The notes under the pieces were generated by a model. That model did no database searches, was not told the origin of the DNA, and worked only from the letters and a program-made list of their open reading frames with translations. Positions 24,338-58,310 of a DNA stretch of 64,000 bases are shown here, piece by piece; the stretch's first letter is position 1; each line of letters opens with the position of its first letter. Source of the DNA: Epithemia pelagica. Its lineage: Eukaryota; Protista; Bacillariophyta. The position numbers and the translations under genes are program-made. The DNA is taken from NCBI GenBank assembly GCA_946965045.2, contig OX337229.1:2294001-2358000 (forward strand), given 5' to 3'.

Positions 24338-24351
24338 GATTAACAGTCTCA
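24338..24351 (+). promoter_or_regulatory. Primer-binding site complementary to a tRNA-Asn(GUU) anticodon arm (nt 27-40)
   Basis: GATTAACAGTCTCA; the reverse complement TGAGA-CT-GTT-AA-TC has anticodon stem-loop geometry. Confidence 0.75.
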
Positions 24352-33556: not shown

Positions 33557-33796
33557 TGAATAAAAACTGACGGCCAGACGCAAAATACGGCTTGCAACAA
33601 TCAAACTATCAGAAATTATGATGACTAAACTAGGGGTGCCCTTTGGGGGCAAATCGCTCACGTAGGGGCCAAATAGCGACCACGGTACCCACTAGCGAAC
33701 ACATAACTAGGGGCCGGGCGATGCCAGGCGGTGCGTAGCGAGGCATGGCGAGGCCCTTCGTAGGTTACAAAGGGGGCGCCCGTGATTATTTATTTA
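33557..33796 (-). repeat. 3' LTR of copia B-
   Basis: Direct repeat of 40726-40965; reads TAAATAAA...TTTATTCA in element sense. Confidence 0.95.
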
Positions 33797-33918
33797 GTCC
33801 CCGCGAACAAAATCGGGGTGGGCAACTTCGTTTAGTTCGTCATGTCAGCAGAGGCCGGTCCAGTACGTCGGACTATTCTTCAAAAGGGGGCGATCCCATT
33901 TTGGATCTAAAAGGGGTG

Positions 33919-36900
33919 CTACCACATGATACGTTGGGCCAGGAATCGCAATCGAGGTCCGGGTAGCAGTTTGGTTAGGATATCGGCAAGATTCGTTTCA
34001 CCTTCTTCCCATGCAATGCGCACGAGTCCAGCGGCTTGCGCTTCACGAGTCCGATGATAAGCAATTGCGTTGTGCTTCTTCTTTAGGACTGATTCCGGCT
34101 GCGTCGAGTTCTTAAACACAGATTCATTGTCGCAAAACACATTCGTCTCTCCATCCAACGGGATACCCATCATTCGCAACTTATACCGAAATGCTTCAAT
34201 CATTTCAATGGCAGTCTTCATCGCCACAAACTCACTGCCAAATGTAGACGTCTCAACAGTGTTTTGTCGTTTTGAATACCACATGATCGGTGCTCGTTGC
34301 AAGAACAGTAGGACTCCTGTTTGAGAGCGCCGTGTGACACGACATCCAGCATGATCAGCATCGACAAAGCAAGTCGTGGTGACAGCGTTTCCACGCGGTG
34401 CTGGTGCGTTTGGCGGAATTGGCTCGGCAGCATCAGGATAATACTCAGACCAATCCGGTCGGGTAAAACGTGACTCGTCGAAGTCAGGGGTTGTATCATC
34501 GAACACAATGGAGGATTTATCGTATTTCTTCAGATACGCAGAGATGTGTAACGTTTGCTCGAGATGTCCTTCTCGTGGATTCGCCATAAAACGGGACATA
34601 TGGGAGACTGCGGTTGTAATGTCGATACGACCGAGTTCAACAATCCAACGGAGAATACCAATCAGTCCTTGGTAATAGTTCGCACGTCTTGCGTCGAGTT
34701 CAGGAGTCGCATCCAATTCCGGGCGATATCCATCGGCGATCGGCGTCGTCACTTTGGACTTCAGCTTTTCTCCGGATTTCTCCAGTTCCGTTTCGACTTC
34801 AGCAAGAGCACGCTTACAATACTTGTCAGCGGACATGGCCCAACGATCGCGGTTCGACGGATCTTGCGTGTCGGGTATGGTATAACGCCGTATTTCGGAT
34901 CCCAAGTATTCGTCTGGTGGTTTGATACTGTCGGGCTTGATCGTATAGCGCCTCTGCAGGTCCTGCATCACGGTTTTGGGATCATGACTAACAATCAGCA
35001 GATCATCAATGTAGACCAAAACATACTCGTAATACTGGAACCCATCAGATGGTCGAGTGTTCGCTCGAAGCCATACGTCCGGATCAGCTTGACACATCTT
35101 AAATCCCATATCGCGGAGCGTTGCGGCGATGTGATCACGCCACCTTGCAGCAGAACTTTTGAGACCATATAATGCGCGCACTATCAGTGCGGGTTGTCCA
35201 ACCTTATCGGGTCCAAATTCGAGTCCCGCGGTGGTATAGGTCTTCTCTTTAGTCGGTGCGTTGAGATATGCGTTTTGCACGTCCCCGACGAGAACATCAA
35301 GACCATTTAGTGCAGCGATAGTAAAAGCAATGCGTACGCTATCGCGTGATACCACACTAGAATAGGTCGATTCTTTGGGTGGATCAGTTTTGTGGCCTCC
35401 GGCCACTAACCGTGCTTTTCGTCGCAGGTCTGATTTGATGTCAAAAACCATATGACAGGGAATATGCTTATATCCAGAAGGCACTTCGCCATCAGCTGGA
35501 AATTCGAAAGCAATGCCAACGTTCTTCATTTCTTTCTCAATAGCCTTACGCCAGAAGTCAGTGCCCGTTCGACGGTCAATCGCCAGAGCTTCTTCCACAG
35601 AGTGGGGCAACTCAATGCCATACTTGTGCGTTCGCTTCCAATAACGTGACTTAACCTTTTTGATAATGCGGTCTCGTTTGCGAAGTGCACGTGGCACCCA
35701 CCATGCGAAAGCAGGCTCTTTTGCGATGCCAGTGGATACTGCGTATTCGGCGGCTTCAATCATATTTCCATTCTTGACGTCTTTGAGCGGCAGCCAAACA
35801 GTCGATTGATCGGACAGTTCACATTGCAATTCCCAGCCTTTCGTTGTGTGGTGTGATGTGCCGTCAAGGAACGATGCGTCTGTTCGCTTAACTGCGGTCT
35901 CATCACTGCGGTGTCCCACAATGGCTTTCAATGTGTTGAACGCATTACCCTCCGGGTCAACTTGCGAATACAGATTCTCTGCGATCATATTGGTTGCATA
36001 CGACTCGACCGATCCATCCGGAAACTGTACATCGTAGTACCGGGTATCAAGGATTGGGTTGGCGTCGCGCTCACCAATAGGTCGCCCATGAGCATCTTTC
36101 GTGCGTCCAATGATTTTCGCTCGAGCGCTTTCACCTCCTCGCGGCAGCATGACTTCAGCGGTGAGATATTCGTCTAGTTCCTCCGGCGTGTACGCGTCGG
36201 ATTCCAGGGCTTCGGCCTCTGGGAACAAGGGCTCTAGAAGTTCACCTTCGTCAAGGAGGTCTGGGGGTGGATCGCTCCCAGTTGTGCCATCAGATGGCGG
36301 CTCATTCATTTGCGTTTGAATAGCGACATCATAGTCCAACAACTGCTGATGAATCGTCGGATTCTTCAGGTCGTCTTCCGGAATGGCCCACACATCTTTC
36401 CGCGTGACATGATTGCCCTCTTGCGTTAGGATTTCATAGGCCATATCATCGGTGCAATCATCGGCTAAACCCAACCATCGGCCAATCAGTCTTTTTTCGA
36501 AGGGAAACTGTGCCATGGGCATGCGATAATACACCGGCTGATAGAATTGGAACATGGCTAATGGAGAGATGTCTGGCGTTGAGCCAATTACATGCTCGAA
36601 CGGTGTACGTCCATCTAATTCAGGGATATCGGATGCCGTGAGTTGCCGTACGTGTGAGCACCATTTAAGAGCATAGCTCCATAAACGTCGTGGTGCGCCG
36701 GTTGTCCTCATAATCTTGACAACTCCCTTCTTTAGTTCACGAATGCTCGCTTCGGCGGCGTTCTGCCATGGACTATAAGGAACCGTTTTCTCCATCTTTA
36801 TGCGGTACTCGTTGCATATTTCACGGGACTTCCCTAGGAACAATTCTCGGGCACCATCAGATACCATTGTTTGGGGAATCCCTACATTGTGAATCAAAGA

Positions 36901-38154
36901 CATCAATCCTTCAGGATGTTGCTTTTTCGACTTCCAGGGATAAACGTGGTCGAATCCTTTGCCGTCTGTAAAGATCGAGGCGCCCGTGTCCCCGTTCAGT
37001 GATACTTCCTTGGCAAACATCTCGTCCGAGAACCAACGGCCTTTCACATTAGGGAATTTGAGCCACGGTGCCTTCTTATGGACCTTTCGCTCAGATGGGA
37101 TTAATACGTTTCGTACTCCAGCCTGCGTCGTCACTTTAAGCGTATTCTTCGCTTTGGGTAAACCAATGCCCCAACGTTGTGACAGTACGGCTGCGTCAAG
37201 CACTCCCTTTCCAGCAGGATCGGCTGGGGAAGACTCGTTAGCAGTCTTGATCATGTACAGCCGACGTTCACGTTTGTCCTCCGGGACTACATCAGGCTCC
37301 TCCTTCTCTGGATGAACAGTGACCGTCGCTATTAAGCGTTCGTACAGGTCGTCGCCTTGTGCGTCGGCGTCCAGATCGGGTGATGGATTGGCAAAAGCAT
37401 GCTGGTACGTTCGCACTGCTTTGATGAGTCGTGGAATGGAGGATGCGGCAATCGAATTCGGATCGCCATTGCGAACGACAGTAGCGGCAGCTACACCCAG
37501 TTTCTCCTCCGCGTCCGCAAAGGCGGTAGAACGAGGTTGCCATGGGCTATCGGCAGTTAGCACAACTTGTGGCAAGTGTTCCAGCTCGTCAGAAGTGGGT
37601 TTGCGAGTGGTGAAACCACTTATCACACCAGCCATGGTGAGCGGGATAGTGAGATCGGCATCCGATACGTGGATACTATGCGTGCTGTGCGGGTCAAACT
37701 GTTTAGGTACGTTGTTGACAACGATGCCATGGGCACGCATCTGGTTCGGACAGAGTAACGAACTGCCCATACGGTCCCCTAAAAACAATGCTTGGTGGAT
37801 AACAAGCAAGTAAGACTGGTTTTCGCTGTCAGTCCAGACAGTGGCAACAGTCGCAATAGGGACATTGGTCAGCGGGTTATATTCCTCCGCGAACGGATGC
37901 ACACTGATATAGCGGTGGGCTTCGGAGAGCATTACGAAGTCTCTTCCCACGGCACAGGTGTCCGCATGTGAGTCCAACTCACAGGTGAGCTCAATGGTCT
38001 CAACACCATATTCGTCGGTGTTCATAGCACATAGACGATGTGCGAAACGTTCAGAATAACTATAATGGGTGCCTACATGTGTATTCGATTGAACAATAAG
38101 ATTCGTTTTATCAAGTTTTACTGCTTCGGCAGCGGATACACAGGGCACACTCCA
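33919..38154 (-). CDS. pol: Copia B- pol (PR-IN-RT-RNase H), in frame with gag after UGA
   Basis: CELDSHADTC, WFSDEM, MVSDGARE, PYSPWQNAAE, KARLVAGGH, DVQNAYL, RALYGLK, YIDDLL, FVDADHAG and NLADILTK motifs. Confidence 0.95.
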   Translation of the reverse strand, partial: WSVPCVSAAEAVKLDKTNLIVQSNTHVGTHYSYSERFAHRLCAMNTDEYGVETIELTCELDSHADTCAVGRDFVMLSEAHRYISVHPFAEEYNPLTNVPIATVATVWTDSENQSYLLVIHQALFLGDRMGSSLLCPNQMRAHGIVVNNVPKQFDPHSTHSIHVSDADLTIPLTMAGVISGFTTRKPTSDELEHLPQVVLTADSPWQPRSTAFADAEEKLGVAAATVVRNGDPNSIAASSIPRLIKAVRTYQHAFANPSPDLDADAQGDDLYERLIATVTVHPEKEEPDVVPEDKRERRLYMIKTANESSPADPAGKGVLDAAVLSQRWGIGLPKAKNTLKVTTQAGVRNVLIPSERKVHKKAPWLKFPNVKGRWFSDEMFAKEVSLNGDTGASIFTDGKGFDHVYPWKSKKQHPEGLMSLIHNVGIPQTMVSDGARELFLGKSREICNEYRIKMEKTVPYSPWQNAAEASIRELKKGVVKIMRTTGAPRRLWSYALKWCSHVRQLTASDIPELDGRTPFEHVIGSTPDISPLAMFQFYQPVYYRMPMAQFPFEKRLIGRWLGLADDCTDDMAYEILTQEGNHVTRKDVWAIPEDDLKNPTIHQQLLDYDVAIQTQMNEPPSDGTTGSDPPPDLLDEGELLEPLFPEAEALESDAYTPEELDEYLTAEVMLPRGGESARAKIIGRTKDAHGRPIGERDANPILDTRYYDVQFPDGSVESYATNMIAENLYSQVDPEGNAFNTLKAIVGHRSDETAVKRTDASFLDGTSHHTTKGWELQCELSDQSTVWLPLKDVKNGNMIEAAEYAVSTGIAKEPAFAWWVPRALRKRDRIIKKVKSRYWKRTHKYGIELPHSVEEALAIDRRTGTDFWRKAIEKEMKNVGIAFEFPADGEVPSGYKHIPCHMVFDIKSDLRRKARLVAGGHKTDPPKESTYSSVVSRDSVRIAFTIAALNGLDVLVGDVQNAYLNAPTKEKTYTTAGLEFGPDKVGQPALIVRALYGLKSSAARWRDHIAATLRDMGFKMCQADPDVWLRANTRPSDGFQYYEYVLVYIDDLLIVSHDPKTVMQDLQRRYTIKPDSIKPPDEYLGSEIRRYTIPDTQDPSNRDRWAMSADKYCKRALAEVETELEKSGEKLKSKVTTPIADGYRPELDATPELDARRANYYQGLIGILRWIVELGRIDITTAVSHMSRFMANPREGHLEQTLHISAYLKKYDKSSIVFDDTTPDFDESRFTRPDWSEYYPDAAEPIPPNAPAPRGNAVTTTCFVDADHAGCRVTRRSQTGVLLFLQRAPIMWYSKRQNTVETSTFGSEFVAMKTAIEMIEAFRYKLRMMGIPLDGETNVFCDNESVFKNSTQPESVLKKKHNAIAYHRTREAQAAGLVRIAWEEGETNLADILTKLLPGPRLRFLAQRIMW

Positions 38155-40230
38155 TCAGGAGGAATTAGACATGTCGGCAGACTTGTCAGAGACATTGGGG
38201 TCACGGACATCGAATTCAAGATCGGCGGAATAACGACCGCACACATTACGCCTTCGCTCTGCGGCAGCCAATTGTCCATTGGCAAGCATAGTGTATTTCA
38301 AAGCTTCGTCGAACACTTCCGTGTGCTCGGCTAAGCGTCTGCACACATGGTACATTTGGCGCTCTTCTCGTTCATAGCCTGACATTTTAGACCAGCGCCA
38401 AGACCAAATTGGACTATTGTGTACAATAGTGTCGATCTCTTCGCGGAAGCTTCCTTTCAGCATACTTTGGTCATGCTTGGTAAGTGAGCGGACGTTGCGA
38501 GGCCCTTCAGCAAACTTGCCTTTGACCGGTAGCGGCAGCTTTACAAAGATGTCGCCGTGTTCCGGGACTGGTGGGATGGTCATATGACTCATATCAGGAC
38601 GTCCGTCCTCTTCCCATTGCCACATCGGTGGATAGGTCTCGTATTCCCCCATGGGGCGAGTACGTACGGATTTGACGGACGCAGATCCGGGTTCGTTCGG
38701 TTGTGCTTTAGCCTTATGCGCGAAACGTCCAAAGCTGTTGCCAGCTGAGGACTTTGTCGGCTGCGAATCATCTTCGGATGATTTTGCAGGTGAGGCGGAA
38801 GCGCGGAACTTAGAGTGCTTGTCTGGCGACGGTACGTTGTCAACAGAGGAGTCAAGCAAGTTCTCGTCTACTTCCATAATGACCGATACGTTGGTCTTAG
38901 CCTCAGGCTTAGCGTCGTCATCAATGTCTACTGAGATTGCGTCCTCAGCAGTACTCCCATGCGACGTTTTCGACCTCTTCGACGATGCGTTGGAAGAGTC
39001 GTCTGTGGTGACGGATCCAAGCTTCCGCTTTTCTTTGCGCTCTTTGCGAAGAGCCTGGACTTGTTTGCGTTCGTCCTCCGTCAGGTCTGCCCATTCGTCG
39101 GCATCGTAGTGACCAGCATGAACGCGGTCCTTCTTTTTCTTGCTCTTTTTCTGATTGCGCCCTTTGCCCTTTCCTTTGCTTGGGGTGGTACTAGCAGCAG
39201 CGATCTTGCGAGAGTCGTCCTGCGTTTCGGTTTTGGCGGCACTGTGCACAGTCAAGAAGTATTGCTGGCACGCTTCAAAGTTCTCCAACTTCTCCTGGTC
39301 ACCGTTGACGACGGTCTTTGCTTGGACGAGTGTCGGATCGGTGATCCCATTCATGAAATCGGTCACTTTTTTCGTTTTCGCGACCGTTTCGCCAAGCTCT
39401 TCCAGGGTGTTGTGCGCATGTTGGTGACGGTGAATGTAGTCATGGAAGCGGTACTTCCCTCGTCCTGTAAACTTAGCATTTGCGATCTGCGCATAAGCCT
39501 GTTTCTTGCGCAGGATGCTCGCGGCCTGTCCAGTGGCTTGCCGCTTGACGGTTAGGTAGGCCTCACGGCCGTCCTTCGATTTCGCGTGCGTTTTAGCAAA
39601 CGTCCATGCCGGACCATCGTAGATAAGAGGGTAGTACAGCTCATACACTCTGCGTCGGTCGGCTTTGTACTGGTCCCCCTCATGACGAGTGGTCGCGACT
39701 AGGTCGTCGTCAATGCAGTCGTAATCGGCGGTTAGTGCGTCGTCCGGTACGTCGGACTCCTCACGCAATACGTAGGTGAGCGGCACTCCCGTTGTCGGAT
39801 TACGGTGCTGACCCAAGTACGTGCGCCACATTCCGTCGTGACGTTCCCAATCGGCAAGGTTCGTTAGCCTTTTGGGTGGTACTGGGTCATCCTGACCATC
39901 AGTGGTGGTGGCATTCGCGAGTTCCGTTACGCGTTTCATCCACTTGGTGATTACGTCACCAGTATAAGCACCAGCATCAAGGTCCTGACCACGGACAGAA
40001 CGGTATTCCAACCACATTCGGAAGCCAAGGAACTTGAGGTTGAATTGGTAGGGTAGGGTGACGCCGTCAGGTAGGTTCTTGGCTAGTGTCTTCAGCATGG
40101 GCTTTACTTCGTTGATAGGAAACTCCAGGAACTGATCCGTTGTCGTGAAGCCCTGTTGCGTTAGGTACCCAACGGTAGCATTGTCGTAGCCACAGCGGCC
40201 CAGTGCAGTACGGAAGGCATTTGCGGCCAT
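38155..40230 (-). CDS. gag: Copia B- gag, 691 aa, with an extended C-terminal domain
   Basis: GVPLTYVLR...DNRRV-like region, YHRHQHAHNTL-like region and YDADEWADLT motif typical of CoDi gag. Confidence 0.9.
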   Translation of the reverse strand: MAANAFRTALGRCGYDNATVGYLTQQGFTTTDQFLEFPINEVKPMLKTLAKNLPDGVTLPYQFNLKFLGFRMWLEYRSVRGQDLDAGAYTGDVITKWMKRVTELANATTTDGQDDPVPPKRLTNLADWERHDGMWRTYLGQHRNPTTGVPLTYVLREESDVPDDALTADYDCIDDDLVATTRHEGDQYKADRRRVYELYYPLIYDGPAWTFAKTHAKSKDGREAYLTVKRQATGQAASILRKKQAYAQIANAKFTGRGKYRFHDYIHRHQHAHNTLEELGETVAKTKKVTDFMNGITDPTLVQAKTVVNGDQEKLENFEACQQYFLTVHSAAKTETQDDSRKIAAASTTPSKGKGKGRNQKKSKKKKDRVHAGHYDADEWADLTEDERKQVQALRKERKEKRKLGSVTTDDSSNASSKRSKTSHGSTAEDAISVDIDDDAKPEAKTNVSVIMEVDENLLDSSVDNVPSPDKHSKFRASASPAKSSEDDSQPTKSSAGNSFGRFAHKAKAQPNEPGSASVKSVRTRPMGEYETYPPMWQWEEDGRPDMSHMTIPPVPEHGDIFVKLPLPVKGKFAEGPRNVRSLTKHDQSMLKGSFREEIDTIVHNSPIWSWRWSKMSGYEREERQMYHVCRRLAEHTEVFDEALKYTMLANGQLAAAERRRNVCGRYSADLEFDVRDPNVSDKSADMSNSS

Positions 40231-40711
40231 GGTTCAAGGGTCGGATGAAGGGTAGGAGGGTAGTAGAAGGTCAAACGGATGGCAAGGGAAGGCTTGTTCT
40301 TGTGCAGAAATTTGCAATTGTGATGGGAAGAGCGAATTTCTGTGAGCCAACAATCTGCGAGTGAATCGGCGAGTAGTCGTCCGGCGATTCCGCGAGCGAG
40401 CGAGCTAGCGATCGGCGAATCCGCGAGTCGGCGAACCGGCGATTCCGCGAGCAAGCAGGTACGTGTCAAAAGCCAGCAGGCTTATATAATTGAGTCGTAC
40501 GGAGCGCGTGGATGGACGGTCCACGTGTACGAGCACGTGCACGGTACGTTGTGCAGTCGCAAGTCACAAATTAGCGAGTGGGTCCCACAGTGACAAAAAC
40601 AAGTCACAGAGATGACGCAAGCGAGCGAGTGACGAAGCCGCTTAGCGCGAACAACTCCCGAGCGTTGATCAGGCGCTTGCCGTCCGGCGAACAGTGGGGA
40701 AACAACAGACT

Positions 40712-40725
40712 TGGGTCTGATAAAC
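40712..40725 (-). promoter_or_regulatory. PBS of copia B- (tRNA-Ile anticodon arm)
   Basis: TGGGT-CT-GAT-AA-AC abuts the 5' LTR. Confidence 0.75.
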
Positions 40726-40965
40726 TGAATAAAAACTGACGGCCAGACGCAAAATACGGCTTGCAACAATCAAACTATCAGAAATTATGATGACTAAACT
40801 AGGGGTGCCCTTTGGGGGCAAATCGCTCACGTAGGGGCCAAATAGCGACCACGGTACCCACTAGCGAACACATAACTAGGGGCCGGGCGATGCCAGGCGG
40901 TGCGTAGCGAGGCATGGCGAGGCCCTTCGTAGGTTACAAAGGGGGCGCCCGTGATTATTTATTTA
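40726..40965 (-). repeat. 5' LTR of copia B-
   Basis: 240-bp direct repeat of 33557-33796. Confidence 0.95.
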
Positions 40966-40972
40966 GCTCGCC

Positions 40973-43928
40973 ATGAAGACTCGCAACGCTAACAAAGCCG
41001 CTGCCGCCGCCGCAAACAAGGAGAACGCACCGCCTCATCGTCCTGCTGCTGTAAAGACTCGTCAATCCAGCAAGGCTGCGTCGACTGTTTGCAAGAAAAG
41101 CAACCCTTCGTCATCGCTCCTCCGGAAACGATCCGTCAACATCCCTGTTCCAAAACAGGGGAACAAGAAACCTGCACCGGTTCCTCTGTCCGAACCTTCT
41201 CAGAACTCGTAAGAAGTCACTGACGATTGTTGTTTCTTTGTGTAGTGTCATGTTCCCATCTCACTCTGTTTGATTGTTCGTATTGCAGGGATGCTGTTCT
41301 TCCTGTTGGAACTTTGGAAGCTCCGAATGTGGAATCCATTGCTGTGGCCCCTCAGTACGTTGACTTTGCTTTGCATTGGTGGATTGCTTTCATGGTTCGT
41401 CCAGTTCTAATTGTCTCGTTGATTGATGTGCTTTGCAGGGCGTCCATGCAAGTGCCTCCCAATGGAACCTCCGTTCCGCCTCGCAATGGAACCTCTGTTC
41501 TGCCTCCCAATGGAACCTCCGTTCCCATTGCTCCGAATGTGGCCCCTCAGTACGTTGGTTTTGACTTGCAGTGGATTGTCTGCATGTTTCTTCCTGTTCC
41601 AACTGTCTCGTTGATTGCTGCGTTTTACAGGGCGTCGACGCAAGTGCCTCCCAATGAAACGTCCGTTCCCATTGCTCCCTCTCTAAAGATGGCTGCCCAA
41701 GCTGCGTCTTCTCGGTCCACCCTTGTTGTCGACGAAGCAACAGGGCGGGTGACCTTTGACTTCCTTTCGAGCAACTCGCTACCCGAGGTAGTCAATACCC
41801 CCGACGATCTTGAGGCATGGGCCTCTTATGCCAGGATCTCGAACGAGCGCGTCTATGGAGACGGGGCTCGCAACGTAAATTTCTCTGACCTGTCAATGAA
41901 CACGGCAGGGTATGAGCGGGAGAAGGCAAGAACATTTGAACGCTTTCTGAACATCCTGGCCCGACATCAAGACTTACACAAACTCACCAAAGTCATCGCC
42001 GATCCTGATAACCCATCGAAGCAAACCCTCCGTCTTTTTACGTTGTTGCGAGGATACAAGACCCCGGAGAAAGCAAAGTGTCTGAATCTTGTATTTTACC
42101 TTTTGGTCTCGAATCTGTACACCAAGGCCGGGCAGGTGTATCAACCGAACGCTTTGAAAAAGATGCTGGACCATGTGTTCTCTGTGCTTCATACCAACGG
42201 CATTCAGTACGGGAGTCTGGATCTTCAAAACCTGCCCCGTTCATACCATGCTTACTGCAAAAAGCAGTTTGAAGAAGAGTCGCGCCCGAAGAAAGCCAAG
42301 ATTGTGCAGAATGACGAGTACCTGTTTCGGAACAAGGCAAACCCGAAACAAAATCCTTTTACGGTCCCCATCGACCTTTTACGACTAGTAGTTTATAAGT
42401 TCCAACGTGATTTCGGTCCACGTGGTACCATCGAGGTAAGTACTGTCTGATTGTTGGTTTGGTTTCTTCGGACATATGATTTCTCACGTTTTTTGCCTCG
42501 TTTCTTACAGACCTGTAAAGTTAGAGTTGCAGACTTAGTCCACATCCCCGCACTTCCAGAGGAGTATGGCTCGTTGGCGGGCCTACCCGCGTACAAACTC
42601 AAAGAGTATAGCCGCGAGAAATGCTCGAAGCTGTCATTGAATAACCCCACTCTTGACGCTGAAGACGGGCGCGAGCTCAACATGATCGTCAACAACCCCG
42701 ACGACCCGTGGTCCACGTACAAATTACTCCAGTACTGGATCGAGCACGCCCTACCTCCTGGCTGGACGGGTCTACTGTTTCTCAATATTGCTTCGGAGAA
42801 GGAACGCAAGGCTCGTCCCTCTCCTGCGAATGACAAGTGGTGGGCTGGCACCATGTTGGTGCGAGACACGTCGAAAGAAGCCATGGCTCGCTACAACAAA
42901 GCAGTCGCAAATGGTTTCACAGGACCGCCTCCGACACGCCCAATCGGTCAACTCGGCAAGAAGTGGCCGAACGAAAATGCCAAGCTCCTATTCAAGAGGT
43001 GCGGCTTAGAAGACTGGAAACAAACGACTGCGCGGACGGGCCGCCGTACCGGAATCTCCAACGTGGCACAATCTGGTGCTCCACAAAAGATCGTCAACAA
43101 ATTCGGACGCCACAAGACTGATGAGGCGAACTTCGCATACCAAGAGTTTGGACCGGAATCCTACGCCGCGGTCTTAAAAGCAAACTGGCATAAGGATGCC
43201 TCGCCTGTCACAGTCAAACAAGGTAAGTCCATTTTTTGGTTGATTGCTATCGTTGTTTCTTCTCTCATTCTTCTGTTTTCTTTTCAGAACCCGTGGAAAC
43301 GAAACCAAAGTCTCACCACGAGAAGAAGGCGCTGTCTGCAGTTTTTCAACCATTGACTCTAGAAGAAGATGATGATTTGACGGATTCTCTCTTCAAAGGC
43401 TTTTACTGGGAGGCTTTTGGCACCAACGGCCAACAAGCCTCGAACATAATTGAGTCACAGGCTCCTCCTCCAAAGAAGAAGCCGCCGAAGTCAGTTGTCG
43501 CCTCGCACATGCCTCAATGCAACACCCCCACTTCCTCGTCATCGTCATCGTCATCCATGTGTTCTCCACACGGTCGGTTCCGCTCGAATGGTATGGTTGC
43601 TCCTACCTTCATCCCACAACAACAACAACCCTCGTCTTTCATCGTAACACAACAAGAACAACCAGCACTTGCTTGAATGCCGACGATGTTGCAACCCACC
43701 TACCCTACACAGCAGCCCATGATGAATGGGTTTATGCAACAACCGTACATGCATACGACCTCAATGCAGTTTGGGATGGTTGCTCCGAACTACGCACCAC
43801 AGCCTTCCATCATGCCGACCACCATGCAACAAACCATGATCCAGCAGCCCCATTTTCAACCTGTTCAGTTCCAACAACCCTCCCATCCACGCAAGTACAA
43901 GAAATCCCACAAGAAGAGGTCTTCTTGA
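40973..43928 (+). CDS. Intron-containing tyrosine recombinase (Crypton/DUF3504-like); in-frame TGA at 43674-43676 before the Q/P/M-rich tail
   Basis: Predicted exons 40973-41208, 41289-41354, 41439-41549, 41631-42435, 42511-43222 and 43288-43676(43928); all GT-AG junctions keep the frame. Catalytic-type motifs are FGPRGTIE (R), RTGRRT, GRHK and AY (Y at 43138). Confidence 0.75.
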
Positions 43929-44384: not shown

Positions 44385-44571
44385 TAGTGCCGCAACTCTT
44401 CAAACCGTTGAATGAAGCTGAGGCTGTCTGTATGGATGGTCAAGGTGTGAAGAGGATTACCCAGGAATCCGTAGTATCGCAGAAAGTGCTTAAGAAAACA
44501 GATCAGGGTCCATATAGACCAGGCTTCAGCTCAGAACGACGACATGGGCCATCCCAATACTGGCCGCAAAC
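44385..44571 (-). pseudogene. LINE RNase H middle segment
   Basis: FLKHFLRYYG...LTIHTDSLSFIQRFEELRH. Confidence 0.7.
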
Positions 44572-44811
44572 TGAATAAATAATCACGGGCGCCCCCTTTG
44601 TAACCTACGAAGGGCCTCGCCATGCCTCGCTACGCACCGCCTGGCATCGCCCGGCCCCTAGTTATGTGTTCGCTAGTGGGTACCGTGGTCGCTATTTGGC
44701 CCCTACGTGAGCGATTTGCCCCCAAAGGGCACCCCTAGTTTAGTCATCATAATTTCTGATAGTTTGATTGTTGCAAGCCGTATTTTGCGTCTGGCCGTCA
44801 GTTTTTATTCA
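44572..44811 (+). repeat. 5' LTR of copia B+
   Basis: TGAATAAA...TTTATTCA, an 8-bp terminal inverted repeat. Confidence 0.95.
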
Positions 44812-44825
44812 GTTTATCAGACCCA
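44812..44825 (+). promoter_or_regulatory. PBS of copia B+ (tRNA-Ile anticodon arm)
   Basis: GTTTATCAGACCCA directly after the LTR's CA. Confidence 0.75.
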
Positions 44826-45306
44826 AGTCTGTTGTTTCCCCACTGTTCGCCGGACGGCAAGCGCCTGATCAACGCTCGGGAGTTGTTCGCGCTAAGCGGC
44901 TTCGTCACTCGCTCGCTTGCGTCATCTCTGTGACTTGTTTTTGTCACTGTGGGACCCACTCGCTAATTTGTGACTTGCGACTGCACAACGTACCGTGCAC
45001 GTGCTCGTACACGTGGACCGTCCATCCACGCGCTCCGTACGACTCAATTATATAAGCCTGCTGGCTTTCGACACGTGCCTGCTTGCTCGCGGAATCGCCG
45101 GTTCGCCGACTCGCGGATTCGCCGATCGCCAGCCCGCTCGCTCGCGGAATCGCCGGACGACTACTCGCCGATTCACTCGCAGATTGTTGGCTCACAGAAA
45201 TTCGCTCTTCCCATCACAATTGCAAATTTCTGCACAAGAACAAGCCTTCCCTTGCCATCCGTTTGACCTTCTACTACCCTTCTACCCTTCATCCGACCCT
45301 TGAACC

Positions 45307-47382
45307 ATGGCCGCAAATGCCTTCCGTACTGCACTGGGCCGCTGTGGCTACGACAATGCTACCGTTGGGTACCTAACGCAACAGGGCTTCACGACAACGG
45401 ATCAGTTCCTGGAGTTTCCTATCAACGAAGTAAAGCCCATGCTGAAGACACTAGCCAAGAACCTACCTGACGGCGTCACCCTACCCTACCAATTCAACCT
45501 CAAGTTCCTTGGCTTCCGAATGTGGTTGGAATACCGTTCTGTCCGTGGTCAGGACCTTGATGCTGGTGCTTATACTGGTGACGTAATCACCAAGTGGATG
45601 AGACGCGTAACGGAACTCGCGAATGCCACCACCACTGATGGTCAGGATGACCCAGTACCACCCAAAAGGCTAACGAACCTTGCCGATTGGGAACGTCACG
45701 ATGGAATGTGGCGCACGTACTTGGGTCAGCACCGTAATCCGACAACGGGAGTGCCGCTCACCTACGTATTGCGTGAGGAGTCCGACGTACCGGACGACGC
45801 ACTAACCGCCGATTACGACTGCATTGACGACGACCTAGTCGCGACCACTCGTCATGAGGGGGACCAGTACAAAGCCGACCGACGCAGAGTGTATGAGCTT
45901 TACTACCCTCTTATCTACGATGGTCCGGCATGGACGTTTGCTAAAACGCACGCGAAATCGAAGGACGGCCGTGAGGCCTACCTAACCGTCAAGCGGCAAG
46001 CCACTGGACAGGCCGCGAGCATCCTGCGCAAGAAACAGGCTTATGCGCAGATCGCAAATGCTAAGTTTACAGGACGAGGGAAGTACCGCTTCCATGACTA
46101 CATCCACCGTCACCAACATGCGCACAACACCCTGGAAGAGCTTGGCGAAACGGTCGCGGAAACGAAAAAAGTGACCGATTTCATGAATGGGATCACCGAT
46201 CCGACGCTCGTCCAAGCAAAGACCGTCGTCAACGGTGACCAGGAGAAGTTGGAGAACTTCGAAGCGTGCCAGCAATACTTCTTGACTGTGCACAGTGCCG
46301 CCAAAACCGAAACGCACGACGACTCTCGCAAGATCGCCGCTGCTAGTACCACTCCAAGTAAAGGAAAGGGCAAAGGGCGCAATCAGAAAAAGAGCAAGAA
46401 AAAGAAGGACCGCGTTCATGCTGGTCACTACGATGCCGACGAATGGGCAGACCTGACGGAGGACGAACGCAAACAAGTCCAGGCTCTTCGCAAAGAGCGC
46501 AAAGAAAAGCGGAAGCTTGGATCCGTCACCACAGACGACTCTTCCAACGCATCGTCGAAGAGATCGAAAACGTCGCATGGGAGTACTGCTGAGGACGCAA
46601 TCTCAGTAGACATTGATGACGACGCTAAGCCTGAGGCTAAGACCAACGTATCGGTCATTATGGAAGTGGACGAGAACTTGCTTGACTCCTCTGTTGACAA
46701 CGTACCGTCGCCAGACAAGCACTCCAAGTTCCGCGCTTCCGCCTCACCTGCAAAATCATCCAAAGATGATTCGCAGCCGACAAAGTCCTCAGCTGGCAAC
46801 AGCTTTGGACGTTTCGCGCATAAGGCTAAAGCACAACCGAACGAACCCGGATCTGCGTCCGTCAAATCCGTACGTACTCGCCCCATGGGGGAATACGAGA
46901 CCTATCCACCGATGTGGCAATGGGAAGAGGACGGACGTCCTGATATGAGTCATATGACCATCCCACCAGTCCCGGAACACGGCGACATCTTTGTAAAGCT
47001 GCCGCTACCGGTCAAAGGCAAGTTTGCTGAAGGGCCTCGCAACGTCCGCTCACTTACCAAGCATGACCAAAGTATGCTGAAAGGAAGCTTCCGCGAAGAG
47101 ATCGACACTATTGTACACAATAGTCCAGTTTGGTCTTGGCGCTGGTCTAAAATGTCAGGCTATGAACGAGAAGAGCGCCAAATGTACCATGTGTGCAGAC
47201 GCTTAGCCGAGCACACGGAAGTGTTCGACGAAGCTTTGAAATACACTATGCTTGCCAATGGACAATTGGCTGCCGCAGAGCGAAGGCGTAATGTATGCGG
47301 TCGTTATTCCGCCGATCTTGAATTCGATGTCCGTGACCCGAATGTCTCTGACAAGTCTGCCGACAAGTCTAATTCCTCCTGA
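45307..47382 (+). CDS. gag: Copia B+ gag, 691 aa
   Basis: Near-identical to 38155-40230. Confidence 0.9.
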   Translation: MAANAFRTALGRCGYDNATVGYLTQQGFTTTDQFLEFPINEVKPMLKTLAKNLPDGVTLPYQFNLKFLGFRMWLEYRSVRGQDLDAGAYTGDVITKWMRRVTELANATTTDGQDDPVPPKRLTNLADWERHDGMWRTYLGQHRNPTTGVPLTYVLREESDVPDDALTADYDCIDDDLVATTRHEGDQYKADRRRVYELYYPLIYDGPAWTFAKTHAKSKDGREAYLTVKRQATGQAASILRKKQAYAQIANAKFTGRGKYRFHDYIHRHQHAHNTLEELGETVAETKKVTDFMNGITDPTLVQAKTVVNGDQEKLENFEACQQYFLTVHSAAKTETHDDSRKIAAASTTPSKGKGKGRNQKKSKKKKDRVHAGHYDADEWADLTEDERKQVQALRKERKEKRKLGSVTTDDSSNASSKRSKTSHGSTAEDAISVDIDDDAKPEAKTNVSVIMEVDENLLDSSVDNVPSPDKHSKFRASASPAKSSKDDSQPTKSSAGNSFGRFAHKAKAQPNEPGSASVKSVRTRPMGEYETYPPMWQWEEDGRPDMSHMTIPPVPEHGDIFVKLPLPVKGKFAEGPRNVRSLTKHDQSMLKGSFREEIDTIVHNSPVWSWRWSKMSGYEREERQMYHVCRRLAEHTEVFDEALKYTMLANGQLAAAERRRNVCGRYSADLEFDVRDPNVSDKSADKSNSS

Positions 47383-50300
47383 TGGAGTGTGCCCTGTGCA
47401 TCCGCTGCCGAAGCAGTAAAAATTGATAAAACGAATCTTATTGTTCAATCGAATGCACACGTAGGCACCCATTATAGTTATTCTAAACGTTTCGCACATC
47501 GTCTATGTGCTATGAACACCGACGAATATGGTGTTGAGACCATTGAGCTCACCTGTGAGTTGGACTCACACGCGGACACCTGTGCCGTGGGAAGAGACTT
47601 CGTAATGCTCTCCGAAGCCCACCGCTATATCAGTGTGCATCCGTTCGCGGAGGAATATAACCCGCTGACCAATGTCCCTATTGCGACTGTTGCCACTGTC
47701 TGGACTGACAGCGAAAACCAGTCTTACTTGCTGGTTATCCACCAAGCATTGTTTTTAGGGGACCGTATGGGCAGTTCGTTACTCTGTCCGAACCAGATGC
47801 GTGCCCATGGCATCGTTGTCAACGACGTACCTAAACAGTTTGACCCGCACAGCACGCATAGTATCCACGTACCGGATGCCGATCTCACTATCCCGCTCAC
47901 CATGGCTGGTGTGATAAGTGGTTTCGCCACTCGCAAACCCACTTCTGACGAGCTGGAACACTTGCCACAAGTTGTGCTAACTGCCGATAGCCCATGGCAA
48001 CCTCGTTCTACCGCCTTTGCGGACGCGGAGGAGAAACTGGGTGTAGCTGCCGCTACTGTCGTTCGCAATGGCGATCCGAATTCGATTGCCGCATCCTCCA
48101 TTCCACGACTCATCAAAGCAGTGCGAACGTACCAGCATGCTTTTGCCAATCCATCACCCGATCTGGACGCCGACGCACAAGGCGACGACCTATACGAACG
48201 CTTGATAGCGACGGTCACTGTTCATCCAGAGAAGGAGGAGCCTGATGTAGTCCCGGAGGACAAACGTGAACGTCGGCTGTACATGATCAAGACTGCTAAC
48301 GAGTCTTCCCAATCCGATCCTGCTGGAAAGGGAGTGCTTGACGCAGCCGTACTGTCACAACGTTGGGGCATTGGTTTACCCAAAGCGAAGAATACGCTTA
48401 AAGTGACGACGCAGGCTGGAGTACGAAACGTATTAATCCCATCTGAGCGTAAGGTCCGTAAGAAGGCACCGTGGCTCAAATTCCCCAATGTGAAAGGCCG
48501 TTGGTTCTCGGACGAGATGTTTGCCAAGGAAGTTTCACTGAACGGGGACACGGGCGCCTCGATCTTTACAGACGGCAAAGGATTCGACCACGTTTATCCC
48601 TGGAAGTCGAAAAAGCAACATCCTGAAGGATTGATGTCTTTGATTCACAATGTAGGGATTCCCCAAACAATGGTATCTGATGGTGCCCGAGAATTGTTCC
48701 TAGGGAAGTCCCGTGAAATATGCAACGAGTACCGCATAAAGATGGAGAAAACGGTTCCTTATAGTCCATGGCAGAACGCCGCCGAAGCGAGCATTCGTGA
48801 ACTAAAGAAGGGAGTTGTCAAGATTATGAGGACAACCGGCGCACCACGACGTTTATGGAGCTATGCTCTTAAATGGTGCTCACACGTACGGCAACTCACG
48901 GCATCCGATATCCCTGAATTAGATGGACGTACACCGTTCGAGCATGTAATTGGCTCAACGCCAGACATCTCTCCATTAGCCATGTTCCAATTCTATCAGC
49001 CGGTGTATTATCGCATGCCCATGGCACAGTTTCCCTTCGAAAAAAGACTGATTGGCCGATGGTTGGGTTTAGCCGATGATTGCACCGATGATATGGCCTA
49101 TGAAATCCTAACGCAAGAGGGCAATCATGTCACACGGAAAGATGTGTGGGCCATTCCGGAAGACGACCTGAAGAATCCGACGATTCATCAGCAGTTGTTG
49201 GACTATGATGCCGCTATTCAAACGCAAATGAAAGAGCCGCCATCTGATGGCACAACTGGGAGCGATCCACCCCCAGACCTCTTTGACGAAGGTGAACTTC
49301 TAGAGCCCTTGTTCCCGGAGGCCGAAGCCCTGGAATCCGACGCGTACACGCCGGAGGAACTAGACGAATACCTCACCGCTGAAGTCATGCTGCCGCGAGG
49401 AGGTGAAAGCGCTCGAGCGAAAATCATTGGACGCACGAAAGATGCTCATGGGCGACCTATTGGTGAGCGTGACGCAAACCCAATCCTTGATACCCGGTAC
49501 TACGATGTACAGTTTCCGGATGGATCGGTCGAGTCGTATGCAACCAATATGATCGCAGAGAATCTGTATTCGCAAGTTGACCCGGAGGGTAATGCGTTCA
49601 ACACATTGAAAGCCATTGTGGGGCACCGCAGTGATGAGACCGCAGTTAAGCGAACAGACGCATCGTTCCTTGACGGCACATCACACCACACAACGAAGGG
49701 CTGGGAAATGCAATGTGAACTGTCCGATCAATCGACTGTTTGGCTGCCGCTCAAAGACGTCAAGAATGGAAATATGATTGAAGCCGCCGAATACGCAGTA
49801 TCCACTGGCATCGCAAAAGAGCCTGCTTTCGCATGGTGGGTGCCACGTGCACTTCGCAAACGAGACCGCATTATCAAAAAGGTAAAGTCACGTTATTGGA
49901 AGCGAACGCACAAGTAAGGCATTGAGTTGCCCCACTCTGTGGACAAAGCCCTGGCGATTGACCGCCGAACGGGGACTGACTTCTGGCGTAAGGCTATTGA
50001 GAAAGAAATGAAGAACGTTGGCATTGCTTTCGAATTTCCAGCTGATGGCGAAGTGCCTTCTGGATACAAGCATATTCCCTGTCATATGGTTTTTGACATC
50101 AAATCAGACCTGCGACGAAAAGCACGGTTAGTGGCCGGAGGCCACAAGACTGATCCACCCAAAGAATCGACCTATTCTAGTGTGGTATCACGCGATAGCG
50201 TACGCATTGCTTTTACTATCGCTGCACTAAATGGTCTTGATGTTCTCGTCGGGGACGTGCAAAACGCATATCTCAACGCACCGACTAAAGAGAAGACCTA

Positions 50301-51618
50301 TACCACCGCGGGACTCGAATTTGGACCAGATAAGGTTGGACAACCTGCACTGATAGTGCGCGCATTATATGGTCTCAAAAGTTCTGCCGCAAGATGGCGT
50401 GATCACATCGCCGCAACGCTCCGCGATATGGGATTTAAGATGTGTCAAGCTGATCCGGATGTATGGCTTCGAGCGAACACTCGACCATCTGATGGGTTCC
50501 AGTATTACGAGTATGTTTTGGTCTATATTGATGATCTGCTGATTGTTAGTCATGATCCCAAAACCGTGATGCAGGACCTGCAGAGGCGCTATACGATCAA
50601 GCCTGACAGTATCAAACCACCAGACGAATACTTGGGATCCGAAATACGGCGTTATACCATACCCGGCACGCAAGATCCGTCGAACCGTGATCGTTGGGCC
50701 ATGTCCGCTGACAAGTATTGTAAGCGTGCTCTTGCCGAAGTTGAAACGGAACTGGAGAAATCCGGAGAAAAGCTGAAGTCAAAAGTGACGACGCCGATCG
50801 CCGATGGATATCGCCCGGAATTGGATGCGACTCCTGAACTCGACGCAAGACGTGCAAACTATTACCAAGGACTGATCGGTATTCTCCGTTGGATTGTTGA
50901 ACTCGGTCGTATCGACATTACAACCGCAGTCTCCCATATGTCCCGTTTTATGGCGAATCCACGAGAAGGACATCTCGAGCAAACGTTGCACATCTTCGCG
51001 TATCTGAAGAAGTACGATAAATCCGCCATTGTGTTCGACGACACAACCCCTGACTTCGACGAGTCACGTTTTACCCGACCGGATTGGTCTGAGTATTATC
51101 CTGATGCTGCCGAGCCGATTCCGCCAAACGCACCAGCACCGCGTGGAAACGCTGTCACCACGACTTGCTTTGTCGATGCTGATCATGCTGGATGTCGTGT
51201 CACACGGCGCTCTCAAACAGGAGTCCTATTGTTCTTACAACGAGCACCGATCATGTGGTATTCAAAACGACAAAACACTGTTGAGACGTCTACATTTGGC
51301 AGTGAGTTCGTAGCGATGAAGACTGCCATTGAAATGATTGAAGCATTTCGTTATAAGTTGCGAATGATGGGTATCCCGTTGGATGGAGAGACAAATGTGT
51401 TTTGCGACAATGAATCTGTGTTTAAGAACTCGACGCAGCCGGAATCAGTCCTAAAGAAGAAGCACAACGCAATTGCTTATCATCGGACTCGTGAAGCGCA
51501 AGCTGCTGGACTTGTGCGCATTGCATGGGAAGAAGGTGAAACGAATCTTGCCGATATCCTAACCAAACTGCTACCCGGACCTCGATTGCGATTCTTGGCC
51601 CAACGTATCATGTGGTAG
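47383..51618 (+). pseudogene. pol: Copia B+ pol with TAT>TAA at 49915-49917
   Basis: Same motifs as B-; HK*GIELP here versus HKYGIELP in B-. Confidence 0.93.
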
Positions 51619-51740
51619 CACCCCTTTTAGATCCAAAATGGGATCGCCCCCCTTTTTAGAATAGTCCGACGTACTGGACCGGCCTCTGCTGACATGACGA
51701 ACTAAACGAAGTTGCCCACCCCGATTTTGTTCGCGGGGAC

Positions 51741-51980
51741 TGAATAAATAATCACGGGCGCCCCCTTTGTAACCTACGAAGGGCCTCGCCATGCCTCGCT
51801 ACGCACCGCCTGGCATCGCCCGGCCCCTAGTTATGTGTTCGCTAGTGGGTACCGTGGTCGCTATTTGGCCCCTACGTGAGCGATTTGCCCCCAAAGGGCA
51901 CCCCTAGTTTAGTCATCATAATTTCTGATAGTTTGATTGTTGCAAGCCGTATATTGCGTCTGTCCGTCAGTTTTTATTCA
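51741..51980 (+). repeat. 3' LTR of copia B+
   Basis: Direct repeat of 44572-44811. Confidence 0.95.
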
Positions 51981-58145: not shown

Positions 58146-58310
58146 GTCTGTGTCCTGTAGTTTCCTGGGCAGGTGTGGGGTGAGGATGTCTCGGATGGCC
58201 TCTGTCAGGCTTAAGAAGCCAAGTCTGTCTGTGTCCTGTAGTTTCCTGGGCAGGTGTGGCATGAGGATTTCTCGGATGGCCTCTGTCAGGTTTAGGAAGC
58301 CACGTCTGTG
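58146..58310. repeat. 81-bp tandem duplication (27 aa on the minus strand)
   Basis: LTEAIR(E/D)IL(M/T)PHLPRKLQDTD x2. Confidence 0.85.

What the first reader, a model, noticed from the sequence alone, without database searches (positions are those of the whole stretch)
44812..44825. Copia B PBS matches a tRNA-Ile anticodon arm and may record inosine-34
Both B copies have GTTTATCAGACCCA, complementary to TGGGT-CT-GAT-AA-AC (nt 27-40; U31:A39, G30:C40). This is a second half-tRNA primer with the same geometry as in copia A but a different tRNA. Eukaryotic cytosolic tRNA-Ile is usually AAU edited to IAU, and RT reads I as G (established). The C opposite position 34 could therefore be a DNA record of tRNA editing; alternatively a rare or organellar Ile(GAU) tRNA is used. 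Two unrelated families in one window suggest half-tRNA priming with diverse tRNAs is systematic in this lineage.
Basis: partly seen in the sequence, partly recalled or inferred. Interest (0 to 1): 0.82.

Follow-up and report, generated by a model that had tools for sequence, protein, structure and literature searches.

The report
Half-tRNA-Ile primer site reading inosine
Two young copia-type jumping genes in this diatom-like genome start reverse transcription from the front half of the ordinary isoleucine tRNA, and one letter of their primer site fits that tRNA's edited base (inosine); this is real, but plant elements are already known to do the same.

Summary
Observation confirmed. GTTTATCAGACCCA lies directly after the 5' LTR of both B copies (44812-44825 +, 40712-40725 -).

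In the whole assembly, which includes plastid and mitochondrial contigs, the arm TGGGTCT(A/G)ATAAACCCA occurs only in two identical nuclear tRNA-Ile(AAT) genes. There is no GAT form. The plastid trnI(GAU) does not match, and the mitochondrial one matches 12 of 14.

The site is the complement of tRNA positions 27-40, with C opposite A34. Genome-wide, 251 sites carry C and one carries T, spread over at least 21 different LTR families. An ADAT2 (A34-to-I34 deaminase) gene is present.

Copia A's site is an exact complement of positions 27-40 of the nuclear tRNA-Asn(GUU). Half-tRNA priming is therefore systematic here.

The idea is not new. Neumann et al. 2019 (PMC6317226) describe plant Bianca copia elements primed by the edited half tRNA-Ile. 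Earlier follow-ups in this scan reached the same reading on other parts of this genome.

No RNA data exist for this organism, so neither I34 nor the tRNA half is shown directly.

Verdict: a solid new member of a known kind, of moderate-to-low interest.

The parts
44812..44825 (+). Primer-binding site of copy B2. It is the complement of tRNA-Ile(AAU) positions 27-40, with C at 44818 opposite position 34.
40712..40725 (-). Primer-binding site of copy B1, with the identical 14-mer.
44572..44811 (+). B2 5' LTR, 240 bp, TG...CA. The 4-bp target-site duplication AAAC lies at 44568-44571 and 51981-51984.
51741..51980 (+). B2 3' LTR, with 2 differences from the 5' LTR. It is preceded by a short purine-rich stretch, GCGGGGAC, at 51733-51740.
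45307..47382 (+). B2 first ORF of 691 aa. It is presumed to be gag (no Pfam match) and ends at a stop in the same frame as pol.
47389..51618 (+). B2 pol, split into two ORFs by one in-frame stop at 49915-49917.
40726..40965 (-). B1 5' LTR. It starts TA rather than TG, as does its 3' LTR. The target-site duplication is GAGC.
33557..33796 (-). B1 3' LTR, identical to its 5' LTR.
33919..38148 (-). B1 pol, an open frame of 1409 aa. A D,D35E integrase motif (about aa 374, 431 and 466) lies upstream of the RVT_2 reverse transcriptase (aa 889-1087).
38155..40230 (-). B1 first ORF of 691 aa, presumed gag.
24338..24351 (+). Copia A primer-binding site GATTAACAGTCTCA. It is the exact complement of positions 27-40 of the nuclear tRNA-Asn(GUU) and serves as the comparison case.

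Best explanation
The 14 bases after the 5' LTR are the minus-strand primer-binding site of a Ty1/copia-type LTR retrotransposon. They pair with the 3' end of a 5' fragment of the host's cytosolic tRNA-Ile(AAU), cut in the 3' strand of the anticodon stem after position 40. This is the same arrangement as in Drosophila copia with tRNA-iMet.

The tRNA gene has A at position 34 and the site has C opposite it. The reason is that A34 of this tRNA is deaminated to inosine by ADAT2/ADAT3, and inosine pairs with C and is read as G by reverse transcriptase.

Shown here: the site, its position, its complementarity, the AAT-only gene set, the near-invariance of the C across many families, and the presence of an ADAT2 gene.

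Inferred: that the tRNA is edited in this organism, that a cleaved half is the actual primer, and two details of plus-strand strong-stop synthesis. These are that it re-copies the primer through I34, which would renew the C at each cycle, and that it stops at G26, probably m2,2G26, which would explain why complementarity ends at position 27.
For: - The site sits directly after the LTR's terminal CA in both copies.
- TGGGTCTRATAAACCCA occurs only in two identical nuclear tRNA-Ile(AAT) genes, which score 65.7 bits on RF00005. Public DNA unitigs carry the same 74-nt gene with no variant letter.
- Genome-wide there are 251 sites with C, one with T, and none with A or G. The other two matches are the tRNA genes themselves. 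The reversed control pattern gives 0.
- At up to one mismatch there are 290 matches (12 in the control), so the C is at least as conserved as any other position.
- The sampled sites fall into at least 21 flank families with unrelated LTR ends.
- 91 sites extend the pairing to C41. That fits the nuclear tRNA and not the mitochondrial one, which has G41.
- The predicted duplex is -21.7 kcal/mol with G standing in for I, against -15.3 with A34.
- An ADAT2/Tad2 ortholog is encoded in the genome.
- No self-complementary primer exists within the element.
- Pol is RVT_2-type, with D,D35E upstream of the RT.
- Copia A shows the same 27-40 geometry on tRNA-Asn(GUU) with a 14 of 14 match.
- The same reading is published for plant Bianca elements (PMC6317226).
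Against: - There is no RNA evidence. No RNA run of this organism was found, so neither I34 nor a tRNA-Ile 5' half has been observed.
- tRNA-Ile normally carries t6A37 inside the paired stretch, which might weaken pairing. This is from general knowledge. The same holds for copia and tRNA-iMet.
- The tRNA gene has an unusual acceptor stem, with G1-U72 and a U6-U67 mismatch.
- The whole-genome tRNA scan scored only 63 of 1840 candidates. The absence of a GAU gene therefore rests on the exact-pattern searches, not on a complete tRNA catalogue.
- The near-invariance of the C could reflect pairing selection alone, so calling it a 'record' of editing is partly a matter of wording.
Confidence: 0.85

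Rival explanations
1. The primer is a true tRNA-Ile(GAU), organellar or encoded by the mitochondrial-DNA copy inside nuclear contig C13. The C would then pair with an ordinary G34 and no editing would be involved.
For: The mitochondrial-type trnI(GAU) arm TCCGTCTGATAAACGGA matches the primer-like strand at 12 of 14 places, with 11 contiguous bases at the 3' end. A copy of it lies in nuclear contig C13.
Against: - Positions 28-29 mismatch, yet ACCCA is invariant in 251 sites.
- The 91 sites that extend to position 41 need C41, and the mitochondrial tRNA has G41.
- The predicted duplex is only -14.6 kcal/mol, against -21.7 for the nuclear tRNA with G standing in for I.
- The plastid trnI(GAU) does not match at all.
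- No GAT gene with the right stem exists in the assembly or in the DNA unitigs.
- Mitochondrial tRNAs are not expected in cytoplasmic particles. This last point is general knowledge.
Confidence: 0.04
2. Unedited tRNA-Ile(AAU) primes, and the A34:C mismatch is merely tolerated. The C would be an inherited accident with no link to inosine.
For: A single internal mismatch in a 14-bp primer duplex can be tolerated by some retroelements (general knowledge). All the sites may descend from one ancestral site.
Against: - Families whose flanks have diverged beyond recognition keep C at 251 of 252 sites. A change to T would improve pairing with an unedited tRNA, yet it is seen only once.
- A34 of eukaryotic tRNA-Ile(AAU) is, as far as is known, always edited (general knowledge), and ADAT2 is encoded here.
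- The mismatch costs about 6 kcal/mol.
Confidence: 0.05
3. The motif is not a tRNA primer site. The element would self-prime in the manner of Tf1, or the motif would serve another role such as packaging or dimerisation.
For: Some copia lineages self-prime or lack a classical primer-binding site. Examples are plant TAR and fungal GalEa (PMC6317226; PMC5445492).
Against: - The best match of the site's complement anywhere in the element is 10 of 14, and 8 of 14 within the LTR.
- The motif is shared by families with unrelated LTRs. It matches a host tRNA arm in the same register as copia A's match to tRNA-Asn.
Confidence: 0.03

Closest known systems
Plant Bianca lineage of Ty1/copia elements, primed by the edited half tRNA-Ile (Neumann et al. 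2019, Mob DNA 10:1, PMC6317226)
   Same: [quoted passage not shown] The authors explain the pairing at the first anticodon base by A-to-I editing. 260 elements were surveyed and 92% carry this site.
   Different: The host is a diatom-like stramenopile, not a green plant. The stem sequence follows this host's own tRNA-Ile gene. At least 21 flank families share the site here. TSDs are 4 bp rather than 5 bp, and gag and pol are separated by one in-frame stop. Whether these elements are phylogenetically close to Bianca or arrived at the same primer independently was not tested.
Drosophila copia and yeast Ty5, primed by a tRNA-iMet anticodon-arm fragment
   Same: The primer site abuts the 5' LTR and pairs with the anticodon stem-loop rather than the CCA end. 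By my reckoning from memory, the copia site covers the same positions 27-40.
   Different: The tRNA differs: iMet has no edited base at position 34. The copia comparison rests on recalled sequences and was not tested with the tools.
Candida albicans copia-type families (internal tRNA-Arg(UCU) and iMet sites) and fungal FunCo1 (internal tRNA-Lys site)
   Same: These show that internal, half-tRNA priming with tRNAs other than iMet is already known (PMC4139406; PMC5445492).
   Different: None of those tRNAs has A34/I34, so none gives an editing-dependent base pair.
Copia A of the same window (half tRNA-Asn(GUU))
   Same: The same geometry: 14 nt directly after the LTR, covering positions 27-40, with G26 next to the pairing. 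It is abundant in the genome, with the 13-nt core present 289 times.
   Different: The match to the gene is exact, 14 of 14, so no editing is needed. Its Pol is only 28% identical to that of B.

Membership tests
LTR retrotransposon of the Ty1/copia type | Direct LTRs with TG...CA ends, flanked by a target-site duplication | tested here: met
   LTRs are 240 bp. B2 has TG...CA and B1 has TA...CA. TSDs are 4 bp, AAAC and GAGC. Four bp is unusual, since 5 bp is typical for copia.
LTR retrotransposon of the Ty1/copia type | RVT_2-type reverse transcriptase with the integrase upstream of it | tested here: met
   PF07727 RVT_2 matches at E=5e-19, at aa 889-1087 of the 1409-aa Pol. A D,D35E motif (D374, D431, E466) lies upstream and can be read from the alignment. 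The Pfam rve family and PDB integrases were not detected by sequence, so the integrase call rests on the motif alone.
Half-tRNA (internal) primed elements | [quoted passage not shown] | tested here: met
   The complement of positions 27-40 starts at the first base after the LTR. There is no TGG start.
Half-tRNA (internal) primed elements | A cleaved tRNA 5' fragment is the physical primer | not testable with these tools
   No RNA runs of this organism were found.
Edited half tRNA-Ile priming (Bianca type) | The host's matching tRNA-Ile gene has A34, the site has C opposite it, and no GAU gene fits | tested here: met
   Only two AAT genes match. The plastid and mitochondrial GAU tRNAs do not fit. 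DNA unitigs show no G variant.
Edited half tRNA-Ile priming (Bianca type) | The host can make I34, meaning ADAT2/ADAT3 is present and the tRNA is edited | tested here: inconclusive
   An ADAT2 ortholog was found. Its C-terminal exon best matches ADAT2/Tad2 structures at E=1.6e-19. ADAT3 was not sought, and editing itself was not observed.
Edited half tRNA-Ile priming (Bianca type) | Phylogenetic membership of the plant Bianca lineage | not tested
   No Bianca reference proteins were available as session sequences.
Self-priming elements (Tf1, TAR type) | Primer site complementary to the element's own 5' transcript end | tested here: not met
   The best internal match is 10 of 14, and 8 of 14 within the LTR.

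The most novel reading that the evidence does not exclude
Two linked readings go beyond what is published.

(1) The C may not only be selected for pairing. It may be rewritten from I34 at every cycle, when plus-strand strong-stop synthesis copies the attached tRNA half from position 40 back to a stop at m2,2G26. The primer site would then be a heritable readout of tRNA editing. The single T-bearing site (G000:C3:238312) could be a copy made from an unedited primer.

(2) Every half-tRNA primer known to me decodes ANN codons and so carries t6A37 with a U36-A37-A38 loop. The set is iMet, Arg(UCU), Lys, Ile and Asn, the last two used here about 250 times or more each. The two primers checked here both end at C40. 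This hints that the unknown primer-making nuclease, or the RT, recognises this class of anticodon loop.
Probability: 0.25. Interest if true: 0.6.

Novelty: new member of a known kind. Interest (0 to 1): 0.35.

Why it matters
It extends edited half-tRNA-Ile priming from green plants to a diatom-like stramenopile. It also shows that one genome runs two abundant half-tRNA primer classes, Ile and Asn, across many families.

In practice, tools that annotate LTR elements by matching only tRNA 3' ends will miss these sites. Tools that demand exact matches to tRNA genes will miss the inosine position.

With about 250 near-invariant sites, this genome would be a good system for asking two questions: how the tRNA half is made, and whether the primer is copied back into the element.

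The finding does not change the known picture of retroelement priming.

Tried and rejected
- **Direct read-out of I34.** The look-up of sequencing runs gave three runs of one study and none on record as RNA. Laying them on the tRNA-Ile locus only confirmed the DNA sequence and showed a third flank.
- **Organelle sequence.** The organellar check therefore rests on whole-genome pattern searches plus the fetched plastid rRNA-operon trnI and the C13 copy of the mitochondrial trnI.
- **tRNA catalogue.** The RF00005 scan scored only 63 of 1840 candidates, so it is not a full catalogue.
- **Replication with other A34 tRNAs.** I considered using the A34 tRNAs of the C21 array (Ala-AGC, Leu-AAG, Ser-AGA, Arg-ACG) to predict further inosine-type sites. 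I dropped this because several of those genes have odd anticodon loops and the scan's notes list only Ile and Asn classes.
- **First pattern for copia A.** TGAGACTGTTAATCTCA found nothing because the real tRNA-Asn stem has a G28-U42 pair. A shorter core found the gene.
- **Integrase and gag.** Pfam rve and gag families and PDB integrases were not detected by sequence.
- **Diatom literature.** The diatom CoDi paper says nothing about primer sites (PMC2806351).
- **Rivals.** Self-priming, the canonical 3'-end site and the organellar GAU primer are rejected, as set out under the rival explanations.

Full report
**What is in the window.**

The 14-mer GTTTATCAGACCCA occurs twice in the window, at 44812-44825 (+) and 40712-40725 (-). 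There are no further matches at up to two mismatches.

Repeat analysis shows that the two sites belong to two copies of one LTR element in opposite orientation:
- B1 lies at 33557-40965 on the minus strand.
- B2 lies at 44572-51980 on the plus strand.

Both copies are 7409 bp and differ from each other at 100 positions. The LTRs are 240 bp. They are identical in B1 and differ at two places in B2. Each copy has its own 4-bp target-site duplication, GAGC for B1 and AAAC for B2. These are therefore two separate, young insertions. In both, the 14-mer begins at the first base after the terminal CA of the 5' LTR, which is where a minus-strand primer-binding site belongs.

**What kind of element it is.**

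The long ORF of B1 (1409 aa) carries the copia-type reverse transcriptase family RVT_2 at residues 889-1087. Its nearest Atlas clusters are RVT_2 proteins, and the only phylum recorded for any of them is Bacillariophyta.

The alignment with the Pol of copia A shows a D,D35E integrase motif (D374, D431, E466) upstream of the RT. That is the copia domain order. Pfam and PDB sequence searches did not detect the integrase or gag.

The two Pols align over about 1250 residues at 28% identity. A and B are therefore distant relatives, not unrelated families.

In B2, gag and pol share a frame and are separated by one stop. B2's pol has one further in-frame stop at 49915-49917, while B1's pol is open.

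**Which tRNA the site matches.**

The pattern TGGGTCTRATAAACCCA hits exactly two places. Both are tRNA-Ile genes with anticodon AAT on contig C6, and they are identical over 74 nt.

The assembly contains a 131-kb plastid contig (C23) and a 40-kb mitochondrial contig (C22), so organellar tRNAs were included in that search.

| tRNA | Anticodon arm | Match to the primer-like strand |
|---|---|---|
| Nuclear tRNA-Ile(AAU) | TGGGTCTAATAAACCCA | 13 of 14; the exception is position 34 |
| Plastid trnI(GAU) | CACCCCTGATAAGGGTG | unrelated |
| Mitochondrial-type trnI(GAU) | TCCGTCTGATAAACGGA | 12 of 14 |

At position 34 the nuclear gene has A and the element has C, which is the partner of G or I.

Extra pattern searches found no GAT tRNA gene hidden among the primer-site matches. 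Unitigs of three public DNA runs carry the 74-nt gene with no variant letter.

**Genome-wide picture.**

GTTTATNAGACCCA has 254 matches, against none for the reversed control pattern:
- 251 have C at the variable position.
- Two have T and are the tRNA genes themselves, read on the other strand.
- One has T in an LTR-end context, at C3:238312.

Allowing one mismatch gives 290 matches against 12 for the control. The position opposite nucleotide 34 is therefore at least as conserved as the others.

Among 33 distinct sampled contexts the flanks fall into at least 21 groups with unrelated LTR ends. Sequence conservation stops immediately on both sides of the 14-mer. In 91 sites a G precedes the motif, which extends pairing to C41 of the nuclear tRNA. 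The mitochondrial tRNA has G there.

**Plausibility of inosine.**

A34 of eukaryotic tRNA-Ile(AAU) is deaminated to inosine by ADAT2/ADAT3, and inosine pairs with C and is read as G by reverse transcriptases. Both statements are established knowledge.

The genome encodes an ADAT2 ortholog on C3. It has the HAE and PC..C motifs spread over two reading frames, and its C-terminal part best matches ADAT2/Tad2 structures at E=1.6e-19. Bacterial TadA matches only at about 1e-9. A second deaminase, closer to bacterial TadA, lies on C4.

With G standing in for I, the predicted primer-site duplex is -21.7 kcal/mol. This compares with -15.3 for A34 and -14.6 for the mitochondrial tRNA. The element has no internal complement that would allow self-priming.

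**Copia A and the claim that this is systematic.**

Copia A's site, GATTAACAGTCTCA at 24338-24351, follows its LTR directly. It is the exact complement of positions 27-40 of a nuclear tRNA-Asn(GUU) gene, whose arm is TGAGACTGTTAATCTTA.

The 13-nt core occurs 289 times in the genome. This genome therefore runs two abundant half-tRNA primer classes with one geometry. In both tRNAs the next base, position 26, is G. In the Ile gene the D stem has G10-C25 and C11-G24, which are the usual determinants of m2,2G26.

My inference is that the 14-nt length reflects a plus-strand stop at that modified base, as m1A58 does for retroviruses. This inference is untested.

**Comparison with what is known.**

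Internal tRNA priming is classical for Drosophila copia and yeast Ty5, both with iMet (from memory). It is also reported with tRNA-Arg(UCU) and iMet in Candida (PMC4139406) and with tRNA-Lys in fungal FunCo1 (PMC5445492).

The specific point of this finding is already published. Neumann et al. 2019 state that plant Bianca elements have primer sites complementary to the post-transcriptionally edited half tRNA-Ile, whose first anticodon base is changed from A to I (PMC6317226). Their table gives 260 Bianca elements, 92% of them with this site.

The diatom CoDi paper does not discuss primer sites. Library searches found no report of this in diatoms.

Earlier follow-ups in this scan reached the same reading on other parts of this genome: s1-225141 and s1-230441. 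The first of these pointed me to the plant precedent, which I then checked in the paper.

**Verdict.**

The mechanism is well supported by sequence. It lacks direct RNA evidence, because no RNA run of this organism was available.

It is a new member of a known kind, in a new host lineage and across many families. It is not a new mechanism.

Two questions remain open. One is whether the C is physically copied from I34 at each cycle. The other is why all known half-tRNA primers decode ANN codons.

Noticed in passing
window 24338-24351; L064:1473-1545 (G000:C1:1271783-1271855): Copia A's primer site is an exact complement of positions 27-40 of a nuclear tRNA-Asn(GUU) gene, whose stem has a G28-U42 pair. 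The 13-nt core occurs 289 times in the genome.
   Followed up: yes
G000:C3:238312-238325 (L035:1501-1514): This is the only element-context site with T instead of C opposite tRNA position 34. It may be a plain C-to-T mutation or a copy made from an unedited primer.
   Followed up: partly
G000:C21 (12.9 kb; L049:4618-9177): A small contig carries at least 22 tRNA genes in a dense array. Several have unusual anticodon loops, with C where U33 is expected. Its origin is unclear.
   Followed up: no
G000:C13:400000-420000 (L052): A nuclear contig holds a stretch with the same tRNA genes as mitochondrial contig C22, including trnI(GAU). It is either a mitochondrial DNA insertion or an assembly join.
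   Followed up: no
window 47380-47382 and 38155-38157: Gag and pol of element B are in one frame and are separated by a single stop codon in both copies. This suggests readthrough expression and is already noted as s1-257185.
   Followed up: partly
window 40964-40965, 33795-33796 versus 44572-44573, 51741-51742: Both LTRs of B1 begin TA, while both LTRs of B2 begin TG. The two copies therefore come from different parent copies. The TSDs are 4 bp, not the 5 bp usual for copia.
   Followed up: partly
L002:1474-1547 flanks (table 7): DNA unitigs show a third downstream flank for the tRNA-Ile gene that is in neither assembled copy. The unitig depth is about 3-4 times that of the flanks. A further gene copy or allele may be missing from the assembly.
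   Followed up: no
general (tRNA-Ile, tRNA-Asn here; iMet, Arg-UCU, Lys in the literature): All half-tRNA primers known to me decode ANN codons and so should carry t6A37. The two checked here both end at C40. This may be a clue to how the primer half is made. It rests partly on memory.
   Followed up: no
G000:C3:2293700-2294960 (L068:1225-2471, minus strand): The ADAT2-like gene is split over two reading frames, probably by an intron, and has a long insert between the HAE and PC..C motifs.
   Followed up: partly
window 41379-41669 and 58146-58307: There are two short repeat pairs: 99-nt units 192 bp apart (84% alike) and 81-nt tandem units (93% alike). The first pair lies between the two B copies and the second beyond B2.
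   Followed up: no
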